64,000 nucleotides of DNA. It comes from Macrostomum lignano (Eukaryota). The position numbers and the translations under genes are program-made. The stretch lies in contig NIVC01004009.1 of the NCBI GenBank assembly GCA_002269645.1, positions 1-64,000 of the forward strand, given 5' to 3'. This document shows, in pieces, positions 6,492 through 10,894 of the stretch. The notes beneath the pieces were generated by a model, which saw only the letters and a program-made list of their open reading frames with translations, was not told the origin of the DNA and did not search any database. How positions within the stretch are numbered: the stretch's first letter is position 1; each line of letters starts with the position of its first letter.

Positions 6492-9400
6492 ATGCAAGCT
6501 TCATCGTCCGCCACCAGCGTGCCCACCAGTGACTCCAGCAGTAACAGTCGCATGTCCAGCACCCGAATCTTCATCCGGGGCTTGTCTCCCGGCACAACCG
6601 ATCTGAAAATTCGGCAGCTCATTGCGCACGAAGCCGGAGTTCCTGATCACTCCATAGTGTTTGCTCAAACCATCTTGGATTCGCAATCTGGCCAGTGTAA
6701 AGGTGCGATTTCAATTTCTTATGTAGTCTGTTTTATCATGCAAAGTATGCCAAGTGCATTAGTTTGCGATTGTAATAATATATATATAATTTAATACGCA
6801 ACCGGCAAACCCGACACCCTCAATTACCCCAGGTAATGCTGACACCCATTTTACAGCTGGGTGAACTGAATCAATGCAGAGTTTTAAGTGTCTTGCTCAA
6901 GGACACAAATTGTTCCGAATGAGTCGAGAATCGAACCCCGACCTTTCAGTCGTGAGTCCGACGCGCTGACCACTGGGCTGCAACCCCTGAATTAGTGATG
7001 AAAATTTAAAATATTTAATTGTGAGTACCTACGTAATTACTATAATAGATCATGATAAATGATACTCGTACGATAGTGAACTACTAGTACTCAATTTCAA
7101 ACCAAAAAAATAAGGCTTCAAAACAAAGAAACTGTGGTCGAAGAGCAAGAAAAGTGAACAAGAACTTTCACTCACATTTAGGGACCGGCTTCGCTGAATT
7201 TCGAAACGCAGAGCGGGCGAAGATGGCAGTAAGAAATATTCAGCAGCTGCAAGCCACGAAACATGCCAGCCAGGGACAATTGAAGGTCGAATTCGCTCGG
7301 GTGAGTCTTCGATATTTTTTATTAGACATCAAACTTTCTGATAGCGCAGCATTTCAAATGCAATGCCGAGCACCCACCGTGTACAAAATACAGGAGGCAG
7401 AAAAGGACGGCAAAGAGATGTTCGTATGGAATTTGCCTGTCAACTGCACGATGGAGGGGATTAGACAGTTTCTACTATACGAATGCAATTGTCGCGAGGA
7501 TGCGATCTTGTCATTCAGGACTTTTCGTGCTAACCCATATTATTCAACAGGCCTTGTGAAATTTAAAACGGAGTTCACGGCTTCACGTGTTATCCAACTC
7601 ATCAATCACAATGGGCTAAGGCTCTCCCACAAATATGGATGCTCTGGGCGACTTGCTGCTAAATTTTCTGAAAAAAAGACCCGTGATGTCGGTGGTCGAC
7701 CAGTCTGCCTTGAAGATATTGTGAAGCCGAGCGCGCATCTTCTTGTAAGTTTCCTCATGGCTGTACTACCCAATTGTAATCAAGGTTGGAGGTGGGTAGC
7801 TGCCTAAGTAAAGCGAGTCTAAAAGGACACCGTTTAGCCTTTTGATTGCATCAAACCTATTCTGCAGGCTAAGTCAAGCAAGCCTCGGTTTTACCCTACA
7901 CCAGACTAGTGATATGCTCTAGATGGCTCGTATTAAGATATAAATGCTCTAATATCGCCTCATACTAATAGTACGAACTGACCAAGCTTACAAAATACGA
8001 GTACATGTAAATGCAACTTGCAGCTGCTGTCAGCTGAGATGCTCCTGTGGTTCTTTGAATCCTTATCGCTTATCTCATTCGATACTTGCAAAGTCTGGAG
8101 GTTAATACAGTAGGAGAATGATGCAGAGTGGCACTGAGGGGAATAATGCTGAGTAGTACCTCGTTAATGCATTGATATGACAATTGAGAAGACTATAGCA
8201 TATTACTATTGCTATGCATATTGTTAAAGTCACGCTAAAATGGCCGGAGCGATTCGTCTTTCTCCTACTATTAGACAGCATACTCTACTTAAAGAGAATT
8301 TTTAAAAAGGATAATTAATCAAAACCTTAACTGACTGTCCAATAATTGACTCGGATCATTCATTCTGAAATTCATTTCAGGAAATCACAAAGGAACCACT
8401 CGAACTGAAAGACGCCGAAAACCCATTCAAATGGTGCGCATACGATGGCTCCGACAAAAATATAGAGGATGTGATCGACACAATTTCGGACCGACTGAAA
8501 CTTGAGCCAATGCTCTCATCGGCTTATCATGGCCTCCTGGCTGCTTATCACGGAACCAGATTCAATCGGCGTAAGCATATCGACTTCACAAAGTCAAGGG
8601 ACTCCTTGAAGAGCGCAATAGACTATTGCAAAGACACAGATGAAGGTCATGTCAGATGCGAATTCGTCTTGCAAGCCATTGAGTTAAACCTGGATGCTAA
8701 GCAGAGACGGAACCAGCTCAACTTCATTAAACGCTTCGAGGCCCTCAACAAGATTTGGAACACTCAAGATGAGGCCAAGCGCATCGAGATCAGAGCCAAC
8801 GTTTTTCACGTTAAAGCTCTGGACTTTTTTCACCAAGGCATAAAAAAGTACGATGAAGCAGAGGAAGCTGTGAAAGCAAGTCTGAGCTTGCGACCGGATA
8901 ACTTCATGTGCATCTACCTGCTGGCGTATATTCGTGCGCGGGTGCGTCGCCATCACAACAACAGGACGCCTGCTGATGCGGAGGAGTTGTTCCTGTGGAA
9001 TCGTGCATATGATCTGGCAAATGAACACCGGTGGCAGGATAAGAATGAAGGAACAAAAATGTACTTCTATCAGTTTTTAATAAACTATGCGGAGGCTATT
9101 TTGAACAACCGGAGCTTAGAAGACAAGTGCCTGGAACTCGCGAATGCCACGTACCAAGCATTGAAAAACATAAGTACTCAGGTATTGGATGAACATTACC
9201 GAATTGTCTTCAGGTGTGAAAAAATCTTTCGGATTCGCAAGCATCCAGAAACGCAGGAACTCCAGGAAATATTGCAACGCCTAGAGAAGGATACTAGAAA
9301 TTCTGATCTGCTTTTCAGATTAGCGATGTTGGCTGAAGAGAAAAAAGATGATGAAAGGTGCGAAGAGCTGCTGATAAGGGCCCAAGAGTTGTCCTATGAG

Positions 9401-10894
9401 CCTGGACACATTTGGGTTGATATTTATTATCAAAACTTCAAGGAAGCTAGACCCGAAAAATTTTCGAAGAATACTATTTTGAATACGTATGACACTCTCG
9501 CTAAAAGATATAAACGTTATGGTTATCCCAGGTACGAAGCCGTTTGTCTGTACTCGAAGGGAGCCTTTATGATGACATTTTCTGAAACAGAGAGCGTTGC
9601 TGATGGTTTTGAAGAAATGGTCAAAGCGGTGCAGGTCTATCCTGAGGTTCGAGTTCATATCCATAAATCGAAAAAAGATGAGACGCTAAAAAATCTGAGC
9701 CAGAAGACTGACAGATGCGAATTCGAGGCTTGGTTTCAGCAGCATATGCTGGACCTTGACTTGCAGTCAGATGAACCACAGAGAATTGTTCAGCTCTATA
9801 CCGAAGCATTGAATAGTGAAAACTCGGATCACCAGCTGGTGTACGAGCATCTTGGTCTGTTATACTTTCGCCTTCGAGACTTTCAAGCTGCAGAAGAAAA
9901 TTTCCGAAAACTTCAGTCTGAAAATCCTCGCAGAAACTCTCTGCTGTCGTCCGCTTTGCTCAAAAGAGCCGAATCGAGAGATGAAGCTGAAAAGAGAGAC
10001 TTGATTGTCGAGGCTCTCCGACTTGGAAACCCGGAGGCGTGCCAGCCCGCTCGACTCTTGCTGGACAACCGACTGGATCATCAGCGGCGGTTCCCTCTAG
10101 AAGCCATCAAGCAGAAGTACTGTCCTGAGGACACTGACAGACCAGTGCAGATCGTGCCGTGGCTGTTCAGCAAGGACTCGTACGAGCTGCTCGCTCTGAT
10201 CAGCATCGCGTCACAGGAGGACAATGAAAACTACACAGAAACGTCGCCTCTGGTCCAGACGGATCTGCAGAAATCGAGACTGGCTCTGGAGCGAGTAGAG
10301 CAGCTCGGGAAACAGACTGAGAACGATTATTATAATGCCATCATGGAAACCCTGAAACTCGCAAAAAGTGCAATGGATGGATTAACTGCAAAACTGGATG
10401 GCAACGAAATGGAAAAGAGGCTTGATTACTTCCCATACGGTTTCAGGTATATGACTGTAAAAAAGGATGAGACAAAAAAGTTGATTTGCGGATTACAGAA
10501 ACAAAGCCACGAAAATCGAAGAACGGAGATTAACAAGAAACTTTCAAATTTGCTCAAGCTGAAGGCATCCGCAAATGATGAAGCGAATCAGAGAGTAAAT
10601 GCGCTCGTTGATTTGCTGAGCGCTCGAGAATCAAAAGCGTTTCAGTTCCAGCAGCCATTTGCTTGGCTTGTGATCTGGCAGGAGTTGAGAAATAAAGCGG
10701 AGCACTCGAGCGGACAGAAGCCCATGAAGACTTTGATTCCCGAGTTATTGGAGGCCTGGAACTGCGACCCAGATTGTGCTGGAAGCGTCGCGCACATGGC
10801 TGCGGAGTTCGTTGAGGAGACCCGGCTGATATTCGAGGCCGAGACTGAGGAGCTTCAAAAAGCAATTACTAAAGGAGGCCAAAGCACCAATTGA
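6492..10894 (+). CDS. RRM-RRM + IFIT/TTC22-like TPR + putative HEPN-like protein, paralog 1 (exons about 6492-6702, 7182-7744 with possible in-frame intron 7301-7392, 8381-10894)
   Basis: RNP2 IFIRGL; RNP1 KGTGFAEF formed across a phase-1 intron; second RRM MFVWNL/STGLVKF; phase-0 intron GTAAGT(7745)..TTTCAG(8380); long exon with TPR motifs (VYEHLGLLYFRLRDFQAAEENFRKL) and ELRNKAEH. Confidence 0.85.
6800..6987 (-). mobile_element. tRNA-derived CORE-SINE in intron 1
   Basis: Minus strand: A-box-like GCCCAGTGGTCAGCGCGTCGG, B-box GGTTCGATTC, then MIR/CORE-like GTGTCCTTGAGCAAGACACTT...CAGCTGTAAAATGGG. Confidence 0.75.

What the first reader, a model, noticed from the sequence alone, without database searches (positions are those of the whole stretch)
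6492..10894. RRM-RRM + IFIT-like TPR + HEPN-like fusion: candidate invertebrate RNA sensor-nuclease
Seen: two RRMs spliced to an 800-aa exon. Its start (LKDAENPFKW..EDVIDTISDRLKL..AYHGLLAAYH..SRDSLKSAID; later KALDFFHQGIKKYDEAEEAVKASLSLRPDN) follows the IFIT N-terminal pattern (LEQL.CHFTW..DLENRV..GIHNLLAYV..ALKSLKEAE; GWALLK.G.KNYERAK..FEK.LE.DPEN). The C-terminal ~190 aa read E.L..AKSAMD.L..YFP..QQPFAWLVIWQELRNKAEH. Established: IFITs bind viral 5'-ppp/cap0 RNA, and Rx4H is the catalytic motif of HEPN RNases used in bacterial anti-phage systems. Inference: the SAxD..YFP..Q..W.L.N..H spacing resembles a bacterial HEPN family, so this may be a one-chain antiviral RNA sensor-effector. I do not know this architecture from described genes.
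Basis: partly seen in the sequence, partly recalled or inferred. Interest (0 to 1): 0.88.

Follow-up and report, generated by a model that had tools for sequence, protein, structure and literature searches.

The report
Flatworm-only RRM–TPR gene, unknown tail
This is a real gene found only in the flatworm Macrostomum lignano that joins two RNA-binding modules to a long helical-repeat scaffold and a tail domain of unknown fold; the proposed "IFIT-like sensor plus HEPN nuclease" reading is not supported for IFIT and is unproven for HEPN.

Summary
Four GT-AG exons (6492-6702, 7182-7300, 7394-7744, 8381-10894) join in frame into a 1064-aa protein. It has an RBMS-like RRM, a second degenerate RRM, a ~570-aa TPR-type helical region and a ~270-aa all-helical tail carrying RNKAEH (aa 997-1002).

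The window is Macrostomum lignano DNA. Relatives were found only in that species, across 5.8 G and 1.84 G protein libraries.

The IFIT-specific claim fails:
- No IFIT hit in PDB sequence or profile searches.
- hhalign gives 3% probability.
- IFIT with its 34-residue blocks shuffled scores as well as native IFIT.
- Foldseek ranks IFIT5 fourth, among generic TPR proteins (CTR9, Ski3, OGT), on a low-confidence model.

The HEPN claim is neither confirmed nor refuted:
- No HEPN hit in Pfam, PADLOC, NCBIfam or PDB.
- AlphaFold pLDDT is about 40 and Foldseek found nothing.
- The RNx3H motif does sit at the predicted end of a helix before a loop, as in HEPN domains.

A second, tail-to-tail paralog lies at 21060-24372 (-). 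Its 3' 1.1 kb has been homogenised with gene 1 by gene conversion. Three of the four copies examined are disrupted.

Most likely this is a lineage-specific RNA-binding TPR scaffold. I put the nuclease reading at about 20%.

The parts
6492..6702 (+). Gene 1 exon 1: start codon, Ser-rich N-terminus, first part of RRM1 (RNP2 RIFIRGL)
   Evidence: ATG at 6492, donor GT at 6703. Pfam RRM_1 matches aa 26-91. PDB RBMS1/RBMS2 match at E 1e-7 and 2e-6.
7182..7300 (+). Gene 1 exon 2: second part of RRM1 (RNP1 KGTGFAEF, split by a phase-1 intron)
   Evidence: AG acceptor and GTGAGT donor, frame continuous. Same junction in P0001 and in the paralog.
7394..7744 (+). Gene 1 exon 3: degenerate RRM2 (MFVWNLP ... 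TGLVKFK) and linker
   Evidence: AG acceptor and GTAAGT donor. The RBMS1 alignment runs into it, to aa 136. No Pfam RRM hit for this exon alone.
8381..10084 (+). Gene 1 exon 4, first 568 codons: TPR-type helical-hairpin region (aa 228-795)
   Evidence: Pfam TPR_8, TPR_2 and TPR_1 match only at aa 714-745. AlphaFold predicts about 25 helices, with pLDDT 60-89 for exon-4 residues 160-460. There are 16 Foldseek hits at E<=1e-3; those listed are TPR or other helical-repeat proteins.
9839..9934 (+). The one canonical TPR motif (VYEHLGLLYFRLRDFQAAEENFRKLQSENPRR)
   Evidence: Best PDB sequence hit is TOM71, E 6e-5 with the two-paralog profile.
10085..10894 (+). Gene 1 exon 4, last 269 codons plus stop: orphan all-helical C-terminal domain (aa 796-1064)
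   Evidence: No family hit at E<=10 other than noise. No relatives outside the family. Predicted helices at aa 850-869, 874-898, 922-954, 961-974, 985-1001, 1009-1019 and 1024-1058.
10688..10705 (+). RNKAEH (R997, N998, H1002): candidate HEPN-type Rx4H motif
   Evidence: Translation confirmed. Identical in all four gene copies. Lies at the end of the predicted helix 985-1001/1002, followed by a loop.
9777..10863 (+). Gene-conversion tract shared with the paralog (inverted copy at 21151-22237)
   Evidence: 1087 nt, 96% identical. Synonymous divergence is 0.01-0.2 here against saturation in the 5' 465 codons.
21060..23618 (-). Gene 2 (paralog) exon 4: TPR region plus the same C-terminal domain, open for 852 codons
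   Evidence: tblastn gives 69.6% identity to gene 1 exon 4. ORF seen. Corresponds to P0002 and P0004.
23992..24372 (-). Gene 2 exon 3 (RRM2), truncated at its 5' end; exons 1-2 are absent from this copy
   Evidence: tblastn with P0004 finds residues 112-238 here and nothing for residues 1-111. Compared with L001 there is a 1.2-kb deletion.

Best explanation
Locus 6492-10894 is an intact protein-coding gene restricted, as far as public data show, to the flatworm Macrostomum lignano.

The protein (1064 aa) has four parts:
- an RBMS/MSSP-like RRM;
- a second, degenerate RRM;
- a roughly 570-residue TPR-type helical solenoid that is not a member of the IFIT family;
- a roughly 270-residue all-helical C-terminal domain with no detectable relatives.

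The gene sits tail-to-tail with a paralog. The 3' halves of the two genes, which include the C-terminal domain, are kept nearly identical by gene conversion.

Shown: the gene structure, RRM1, the TPR nature of the middle region, the lineage restriction, the gene conversion, and long-term purifying selection on the TPR part.

Inferred: the protein binds single-stranded RNA (or DNA) through RRM1 and uses the solenoid as a platform for partner proteins or for the nucleic acid. In other words, it is an RNA-binding adaptor or scaffold. The C-terminal domain either oligomerises the protein or acts on the bound RNA. A HEPN-type metal-independent RNase is one candidate activity, which I put at about one in five.
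For: - Gene model with canonical splice sites and one open frame, matching independent public models.
- RRM1 passes the Pfam cut-off. It aligns with RBMS1 across RRM1, the linker and the start of RRM2.
- One TPR passes Pfam. The AlphaFold model shows helical hairpins with pLDDT 60-89 over 300 residues. The listed Foldseek hits at E<=1e-3 are TPR or other helical-repeat proteins such as CTR9, IFIT5, Ski3, OGT and SPINDLY.
- Only M. lignano proteins are found in three searches of 5.8 G proteins. For the C-terminal domain, nothing else turns up in a full HMMER scan of 1.84 G representatives. Metagenome and viral contigs give nothing.
- Gene 1 against gene 2 over the first 465 codons of exon 4: dN 0.33-0.41 with saturated dS. 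This indicates long-term constraint.
- The 3' tract is 96% identical with dS 0.01-0.2, which indicates gene conversion.
Against: - No function has been tested, and no expression data were available to me.
- RNP1 of RRM1 lacks the usual aromatic residue at position 3 (KGTGFAEF; RGLGFVEF in the paralog). RRM2 is degenerate, so RNA binding is an inference.
- Three of the four copies examined are disrupted, which could mean the family is dispensable.
- The RNx3H motif sits at a helix end in an all-helical domain. That is more than a pure scaffold model predicts.
Confidence: 0.5

Rival explanations
1. Single-chain RNA sensor-nuclease. The RRMs and/or the TPR solenoid recognise an RNA. The C-terminal domain is a divergent HEPN RNase whose R997/N998/H1002 form a composite active site after dimerisation and cleave the RNA, leaving a 2',3'-cyclic phosphate.
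For: - RNKAEH fits Rx4-6H with the typical polar residue (N) after R.
- RNx3H is expected only about 0.03 times by chance in this 269-aa domain.
- Both AlphaFold runs end a helix at aa 1001/1002 and follow it with a loop. That is where PMC3710099 places the motif: end of helix 3, start of the loop to helix 4.
- The layout fits the published description: helix pair 850-898, helical insert 901-974, helix 985-1001, then a kinked long helix 1009-1058.
- TPR+HEPN fusions (DZIP3/hRUL138, C6orf70, LA2681) and HEPN combined with RRM or KH in invertebrate lineage-specific expansions are documented.
- The motif is identical in all four copies.
- Copy-number flux and pseudogenisation are typical of conflict genes.
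Against: - No HEPN model in Pfam (including HEPN_DZIP3), PADLOC or NCBIfam matches at E<=10.
- No PDB sequence hit to any HEPN.
- Foldseek's best E is 1.2, with no HEPN among the hits.
- 3D confidence is below 50 throughout the domain, so the fold is unknown.
- Motif conservation is uninformative, because the region is homogenised by gene conversion.
- Rx4H is common: 4 occurrences in this protein. The motif was picked out after the fact.
- The upstream acidic Ex3[KR] signature is not clearly in the predicted helix 2.
Confidence: 0.2
2. Decaying lineage-specific chimera. An RBMS-like RRM gene fragment was joined to a long intron-less TPR exon. The family now has little or no function and is being lost copy by copy.
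For: - In the public assembly copy of the locus (L001), the gene-1 homolog carries CAA>TAA at codon 351 of exon 4. The gene-2 homolog carries TCG>TAG at codon 627, upstream of the C-terminal domain.
- The window's gene 2 has lost exons 1-2 to a 1.2-kb deletion beside a transposon insertion.
- dN/dS between gene 1 and its L001 homolog is about 0.6 overall and about 1.1 over codons 568-700.
- There are no relatives in other taxa.
Against: - Gene 1 in the window is open for all 1064 codons with intact splice sites.
- The two paralogs diverged long ago (saturated dS) yet kept dN/dS well below 0.2 in the TPR region.
- Exon 4 of gene 2 is still open for 852 codons.
Confidence: 0.2
3. The C-terminal domain is a divergent HPF1-like (histone PARylation factor 1) module, so the protein would link RNA binding to PARP-dependent ADP-ribosylation.
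For: - Pfam HPF1 matches aa 913-962 at E 0.03-0.07.
- The best PDB sequence hit of the domain is Nematostella HPF1 6tvh (E 0.49), with an ungapped 56-residue alignment.
- By my own mapping of that alignment onto human HPF1 numbering, GFR falls on GYR (Y238/R239) and ANDE on ANDE (D283/E284).
Against: - Scores are 13-14 bits against a cut-off of 27.1. That is the same level as unrelated chance hits in the same scans (CDC37_N, MOLO1, DUF4288).
- hhalign against human+mouse HPF1 gives a score of 12.7, below the mean of shuffled controls (14.4), and does not recover that region.
- The arginine is replaced in the L001 gene-1 homolog (GFSF).
Confidence: 0.04

Closest known systems
RBMS1/2/3 (MSSP) tandem-RRM single-strand-binding proteins
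   Same: RRM1 is most similar to RBMS1 and RBMS2 (PDB 6m75 E 1e-7; 1x4e E 2e-6). The alignment continues through the short linker into the start of RRM2, so the tandem spacing is the same.
   Different: RBMS proteins, to my knowledge, have no TPR region and no such C-terminal domain. Here RNP1 lacks the position-3 aromatic residue and RRM2 is degenerate.
[quoted passage not shown]
   Same: Both are long all-TPR solenoids. IFIT5 is the fourth-best Foldseek hit (E 4e-5, TMt 0.39) and IFIT1 appears lower down. A nominal colinear alignment puts PFKW on HFTW.
   Different: There is no significant sequence or profile similarity. Block-shuffled IFIT scores as well as native IFIT. The nominal T37 equivalent is not kept in the paralog (DTI against RKL). 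IFITs, to my knowledge, have no RRMs and no extra C-terminal domain. The abstract of PMC3688568 reports IFIT genes in jawed vertebrates down to the elephant shark.
Long TPR scaffolds of RNA-handling complexes (CTR9 of Paf1C, Ski3 of the SKI complex)
   Same: These are among the best Foldseek matches to the model: CTR9 E 8e-6 to 5e-4, Ski3 2e-4. They are long irregular TPR arrays used as assembly platforms.
   Different: TM-scores are low (0.12-0.24), the model is low-confidence, and there is no sequence similarity. Those proteins are conserved across eukaryotes. To my knowledge they lack RRMs.
HEPN RNases fused to repeats in animals (DZIP3/hRUL138-type HEPN, C6orf70 HEPN) and RNase L/Ire1 KEN domains
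   Same: Table 1 of PMC3710099 lists TPR fusions for the DZIP3/hRUL138 and C6orf70 HEPN families, and ankyrin-repeat and kinase fusions for KEN. The motif RNKAEH resembles the RNx3H form.
   Different: No profile or structural match to any HEPN family was obtained. The fold of the domain is unknown.
HPF1
   Same: A weak ungapped 56-residue similarity. By my own mapping it covers HPF1's functional GYR and NDE positions.
   Different: The score is far below the family cut-off and at noise level. It was not reproduced by hhalign.

Membership tests
IFIT | Significant sequence or profile similarity to IFIT1/2/3/5 | tested here: not met
   No IFIT chain among PDB hits at E<=1 (protein) or E<=10 (two-paralog profile). 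BLASTP best E is 0.1-0.2, for short non-colinear pieces. hhalign probability is 3.3%.
IFIT | IFIT-specific N-terminal pattern and order of subdomains (CHFTW helix and onward) | tested here: not met
   Native IFIT scores 27.2 in hhalign. IFIT with its 34-residue blocks shuffled scores a mean of 27.9, and 119 of 120 shuffles reach or exceed the native score. Colinearity therefore adds nothing.
IFIT | TPR clamp fold closest to IFIT structures | tested here: inconclusive
   IFIT5 ranks 4th (E 4e-5, TMt 0.39, rmsd 11 A), between CTR9, IFT-A, Ski3 and OGT. The model's mean pLDDT is 50, and it is below 50 for exon-4 residues 1-130.
IFIT | 5'-ppp/cap0 RNA pocket residues; induction by virus or interferon | not testable with these tools
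   There is no reliable alignment or model on which to map pocket residues. No expression data were available.
HEPN superfamily | Rx4-6H motif with a polar residue after R | tested here: met
   RNKAEH at aa 997-1002, nt 10688-10705. Identical in four copies. Definition taken from PMC3710099.
HEPN superfamily | [quoted passage not shown] | tested here: inconclusive
   Two AlphaFold runs end a helix at aa 1001/1002 and follow it with a loop. pLDDT there is below 50, so exposure cannot be judged.
HEPN superfamily | Four-helix up-down bundle, with an insert between helices 2 and 3 | tested here: inconclusive
   The helix order is compatible. The 3D models are unusable (pLDDT 39.8, and 30-48 within the larger model). 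Foldseek's best E is 1.2, with no HEPN.
HEPN superfamily | Profile similarity to at least one HEPN family | tested here: not met
   Pfam, PADLOC and NCBIfam at E<=10 give no HEPN model. PDB phmmer at E<=10 gives none. HEPN families are very divergent, so this counts only weakly against.
HEPN superfamily | Metal-independent RNase activity that depends on R and H | not testable with these tools
   Needs biochemistry.
RRM (RBMS-like tandem) | RRM profile match above the curated cut-off, with RNP2 and RNP1 motifs | tested here: met
   RRM1: Pfam RRM_1 scores 29.1 bits against a 20.7 cut-off. RBMS1 E 1e-7. RNP2 is RIFIRGL and RNP1 is KGTGFAEF. RRM2 on its own gives no RRM hit.
TPR | TPR profile match above the cut-off, and a helical-hairpin solenoid | tested here: met
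   TPR_8 scores 32.8 against 25.7 and TPR_2 scores 30.3 against 27, both at aa 714-745. Helical hairpins are predicted. There are 16 Foldseek hits at E<=1e-3 to TPR or other helical-repeat proteins.
HPF1 | Pfam HPF1 match above the cut-off | tested here: not met
   13.2-14.4 bits against a cut-off of 27.1. hhalign against HPF1 is at shuffle level.

The most novel reading that the evidence does not exclude
A flatworm-specific, one-chain RNA sensor-effector. RBMS-like RRMs and a TPR solenoid would select an RNA, viral or transposon-derived. A previously unrecognised, highly divergent HEPN-family RNase domain at the C-terminus (R997/N998/H1002) would cleave it. The gene pair's gene conversion, copy loss and nonsense alleles would then reflect an ongoing host-parasite conflict.
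Probability: 0.15. Interest if true: 0.7.

Novelty: new variant of a known kind. Interest (0 to 1): 0.35.

Why it matters
If the C-terminal domain proved to be a HEPN RNase, this would be a new HEPN family. It would also be a compact RRM/TPR-guided nuclease in a regenerating flatworm model that can be manipulated by RNAi and transgenesis. That would bear on how invertebrates without interferon restrict RNA parasites.

As it stands, the finding documents three things:
- a lineage-restricted gene built from an RBMS-like RRM pair and a long intron-less TPR exon;
- a clear case of 3'-end gene conversion between inverted paralogs;
- different disabling lesions in different copies.

This is useful for annotating M. 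lignano. It is also a caution against reading IFIT ancestry into generic TPR periodicity.

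Tried and rejected
1. IFIT homology. PDB phmmer and hmmsearch, BLASTP, and hhalign with a block-shuffle control were all negative. Foldseek was non-specific.

2. HEPN by profiles. Pfam, PADLOC and NCBIfam at E<=10 on the isolated domain and on sub-fragments gave nothing.

3. Distant relatives, wanted for a conservation test.
- Three word-indexed searches found only M. lignano.
- A full HMMER scan of 1.84 G representatives with the C-terminal domain found only its own family plus P0006. 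P0006 is a 3865-aa acidic repetitive protein matched 18 times by composition, and I rejected it as spurious.
- Metagenome and viral contig scans found nothing.

4. Structure.
- AlphaFold of the C-terminal domain alone gave pLDDT 39.8.
- AlphaFold of the whole of exon 4 with a 5-sequence alignment gave a mean pLDDT of 50.4, with the C-terminus at 30-48.
- Foldseek on the C-terminal model had a best E of 1.2, which is meaningless.

5. HPF1 lead. It was followed through PDB, Pfam fragment scans and hhalign with shuffles and rejected as noise.

6. Transcript evidence through exact-protein look-up. The longest ATG-initiated ORF of exon 4 is not on record.

7. Conservation of RNKAEH among paralogs. 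It is uninformative because of gene conversion.

8. tRNA scan of the SINE-like insert in intron 1 found nothing.

Full report
**What is there**

The region is eukaryotic DNA. Reading 6300-8520 and assembling the exons gives a four-exon gene on the + strand:

| Exon | Coordinates | Splice signals |
|---|---|---|
| 1 | 6492-6702 | ATG; donor GT |
| 2 | 7182-7300 | AG ... GTGAGT |
| 3 | 7394-7744 | AG ... GTAAGT |
| 4 | 8381-10894 | AG acceptor; TGA stop |

The joined frame is open for 1064 codons.

The best database matches are five unnamed "RRM domain-containing proteins" of the flatworm Macrostomum lignano. One of them lies on contig NIVC01004067.1 of assembly GCA_002269645.1, fetched as L001. 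Those public gene models use the same RRM-to-TPR junction (HLL|EIT in P0001; VLS|EIS in P0004).

**Domains**

- **RRM1** (aa about 24-110, split by a phase-1 intron inside RNP1) passes Pfam RRM_1 at 29.1 bits against a 20.7 cut-off. It is closest to the RBMS/MSSP proteins: PDB 6m75 gives E 1e-7. That alignment runs through the linker into the second RRM.
- **RRM2** (exon 3) keeps an RNP2-like MFVWNLP. It is otherwise degenerate and matches no RRM model by itself.
- **Exon 4, middle region.** One canonical TPR (aa 714-745) passes the Pfam TPR cut-offs. The remaining roughly 540 residues upstream are predicted as a run of helical hairpins. AlphaFold is moderately confident (pLDDT 60-89) only for exon-4 residues 160-460.
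- **Last 269 residues.** These are predicted to be all-helical and contain RNKAEH (aa 997-1002; nt 10688-10705).

**The IFIT claim**

IFIT1, 2, 3 and 5 are all in the PDB sequence library.
- None is hit by the protein at E<=1 or by a profile of the two window paralogs at E<=10. The best hits there are TOM71 and other generic TPRs, all at the one canonical repeat.
- BLASTP against IFIT5 and IFIT1 gives only short, non-colinear pieces with E>0.1.
- hhalign of the paralog pair against IFIT5+IFIT1 does produce a colinear alignment that places PFKW on HFTW. Its probability is 3.3% and its score 27.2.
- As a control I shuffled the IFIT alignment in 34-residue blocks. 119 of 120 shuffles scored at least as well, with a mean of 27.9. 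The score is a local, order-independent TPR match. The N-terminal "IFIT pattern" adds nothing measurable.
- In that nominal alignment the position under IFIT5 T37 is T in gene 1 but K in the paralog (DVIDTIS against DVIRKLS).
- Foldseek with the exon-4 model lists IFIT5 fourth (E 4e-5, TMt 0.39, rmsd 11 A). It sits between CTR9, IFT-A, Ski3, OGT, SPINDLY and designed TPR proteins at similar E-values. The N-terminal 130 residues at issue are modelled below pLDDT 50.

Conclusion: this is a TPR solenoid, not demonstrably an IFIT relative. The abstract of PMC3688568 reports IFIT genes in jawed vertebrates down to the elephant shark.

**The HEPN claim**

Negative evidence:
- No HEPN model of Pfam, PADLOC or NCBIfam matches the isolated domain or its fragments at E<=10.
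- There is no HEPN chain among PDB sequence hits.
- A full HMMER scan of 1.84 billion representative proteins with the domain returned only its own family and a compositionally biased repetitive protein.
- AlphaFold gave pLDDT 39.8 for the domain alone and 30-48 within the larger model.
- Foldseek on it found nothing, with a best E of 1.2.

Positive evidence is limited but real:
- RNKAEH fits the Rx4-6H definition, with the usual polar residue after R (PMC3710099).
- RNx3H is expected only about 0.03 times in 269 residues of this composition, although plain Rx4H occurs four times in the protein.
- Both AlphaFold runs end a helix at aa 1001/1002 and follow it with a loop. [quoted passage not shown]
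- The predicted order also matches the published description. It runs: helix pair 850-898, helical insert 901-974, helix 985-1001, then a long kinked helix 1009-1058.

The motif is identical in all four copies I could examine. That says little, because the region is homogenised (see the next section). Allowing for the after-the-fact choice of motif, I put the HEPN reading at about 20%.

**A lead that went nowhere**

The best PDB sequence hit of the C-terminal domain is Nematostella HPF1 (6tvh, E 0.49). Pfam HPF1 matches the same 50 residues (E 0.03-0.07). By my own mapping onto human HPF1 numbering, the ungapped alignment places GFR and ANDE on HPF1's Y238/R239 and D283/E284.

The scores (13-14 bits against a cut-off of 27.1) are no better than unrelated chance hits in the same scans (CDC37_N, MOLO1, DUF4288). 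hhalign against human+mouse HPF1 falls within the shuffle distribution. The arginine is not kept in the L001 homolog of gene 1. I treat this lead as noise.

**Genomic context and evolution**

A paralog lies tail-to-tail on the minus strand. Its exon 4 is at 23618-21060, open for 852 codons and 69.6% identical. Its exon 3 is at 24372-23992.

The last 1087 nt of the two genes (9777-10863 against 21151-22237) are 96% identical.

| Comparison, gene 1 vs gene 2 | dN | dS | Reading |
|---|---|---|---|
| First 465 codons of exon 4 | 0.33-0.41 | saturated | Old duplication under purifying selection |
| 3' part | low | 0.01-0.2 | Gene conversion covering the last TPRs and the whole C-terminal domain |

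A BEL/Pao LTR retrotransposon sits between the genes.

The window's gene 2 has lost exons 1-2 and the start of exon 3. Compared with L001 there is a 1.2-kb deletion next to a 660-bp insertion carrying a DDE_Tnp_4 transposase fragment.

L001 holds the same gene pair from another copy of the locus, about 90-95% identical. There:
- the gene-1 homolog has CAA>TAA at exon-4 codon 351 and GGA>TGA at codon 830;
- the gene-2 homolog has TCG>TAG at codon 627, just upstream of the C-terminal domain.

Gene 1 of the window is thus the only fully intact copy of the four.

**Interpretation**

The safest reading is a lineage-specific RNA-binding adaptor. An RBMS-like RRM would bind single-stranded nucleic acid. 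A long irregular TPR platform, like those of CTR9 or Ski3, would hold partners. The function of the orphan helical tail is unknown.

The sensor-nuclease reading remains possible. It would fit a known theme: HEPN RNases combined with repeats and RNA-binding domains in invertebrate lineage-specific expansions (PMC3710099; PMC8195603). Nothing beyond the motif and its predicted position supports it, however.

The alternative that the family is decaying is kept alive by the three disrupted copies.

**Novelty and score**

The gene is already in public databases as an unnamed prediction, but the architecture has not been described. It is a new variant built from known module types. Interest is moderate to low (0.35) until orthologs, a confident fold or an assay decide the nature of the C-terminal domain.

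Noticed in passing
window 21060-24372 (-), with 9777-10863 against 21151-22237: An inverted, tail-to-tail paralog of the gene. The 3' 1087 nt of the two genes are 96% identical while the 5' parts are saturated at synonymous sites. This is a clean gene-conversion tract covering the last TPRs and the C-terminal domain.
   Followed up: yes
window 24373-25081: Gene 2 has lost exons 1-2 and the start of exon 3. Compared with L001 there is a 1217-bp deletion, flanked by a ~660-bp insertion that carries a DDE_Tnp_4 (Harbinger/PIF-type) transposase fragment (ORF 24510-24944, Pfam E 4e-28).
   Followed up: yes
L001 (NIVC01004067.1) 18534-21038 (-) and 11263-13821 (+): The same gene pair in the public assembly carries single-base nonsense changes. 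The gene-1 homolog has CAA>TAA (codon 351) and GGA>TGA (codon 830). The gene-2 homolog has TCG>TAG (codon 627). These may be alleles, homeolog decay or assembly errors.
   Followed up: partly
window 14831-19146 (-): A BEL/Pao-type LTR retrotransposon lies between the two paralogs. It has a 1065-aa pol ORF (Peptidase_A17, RVT_1, Integrase_H2C2, rve, DUF5641) and an upstream gag/aspartyl-protease ORF. The corresponding interval in L001 is about 5 kb shorter.
   Followed up: partly
window ~6830-6990 (intron 1 of gene 1): By eye this stretch looks like a tRNA-derived SINE in antisense orientation (…gaatcgaaccccgacc…). ARAGORN finds no tRNA there. It accounts for intron 1 being about 480 nt, against about 90 nt in the paralog of L001.
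   Followed up: partly
window 58563-63996 (-): A Polinton/Maverick-like cluster. It contains a protein-primed type B DNA polymerase with an Endonuclease_7 domain (61663-63996, running to the window edge), a dUTPase (59932-60600) and, by eye only, a P-loop ATPase-like ORF (58563-59369) that has no Pfam hit.
   Followed up: partly
window 33204-39802 (+): A series of long ORFs. By eye they form a Gypsy-like LTR retroelement: gag with a CCHC knuckle, an env-like ORF, RT with YVDD, and an integrase. They were not scanned against Pfam.
   Followed up: no
window 39908-40429, 42736-43419, 47701-48324 (+): Three related cysteine-rich ORFs with a CPVCLE... motif, which looks RING-like. One gives a weak Sina_RING hit (E 1.5e-4). 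They may be a local gene family or transposon cargo.
   Followed up: partly
window 30127-30690 (-): An ORF encoding a fibrinogen C-terminal globular domain (Pfam E 2e-29), probably one exon of a fibrinogen-related protein gene.
   Followed up: partly
window 40461-41249 (-): A mariner/Tc1-type transposase ORF (Transposase_1, DDE_3).
   Followed up: partly
window 11190-11400 onward; 28855-29433; 31647-32703; 52292-53351: Several long tandem-repeat arrays: a unit of about 45 nt just downstream of gene 1, a 15-nt unit, a CLSV-type unit and a unit of about 30 nt. They create long artefactual ORFs on both strands.
   Followed up: no
P0001, P0003 (UniProt models of the family): The public models of this family are damaged around the C-terminal domain. 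P0001 ends in a frame-shifted tail (…KKDETKKVDLRITETKPRKSKNGD) before the RNKAEH motif. P0003 skips 36 residues. Database architectures therefore under-report the domain.
   Followed up: partly
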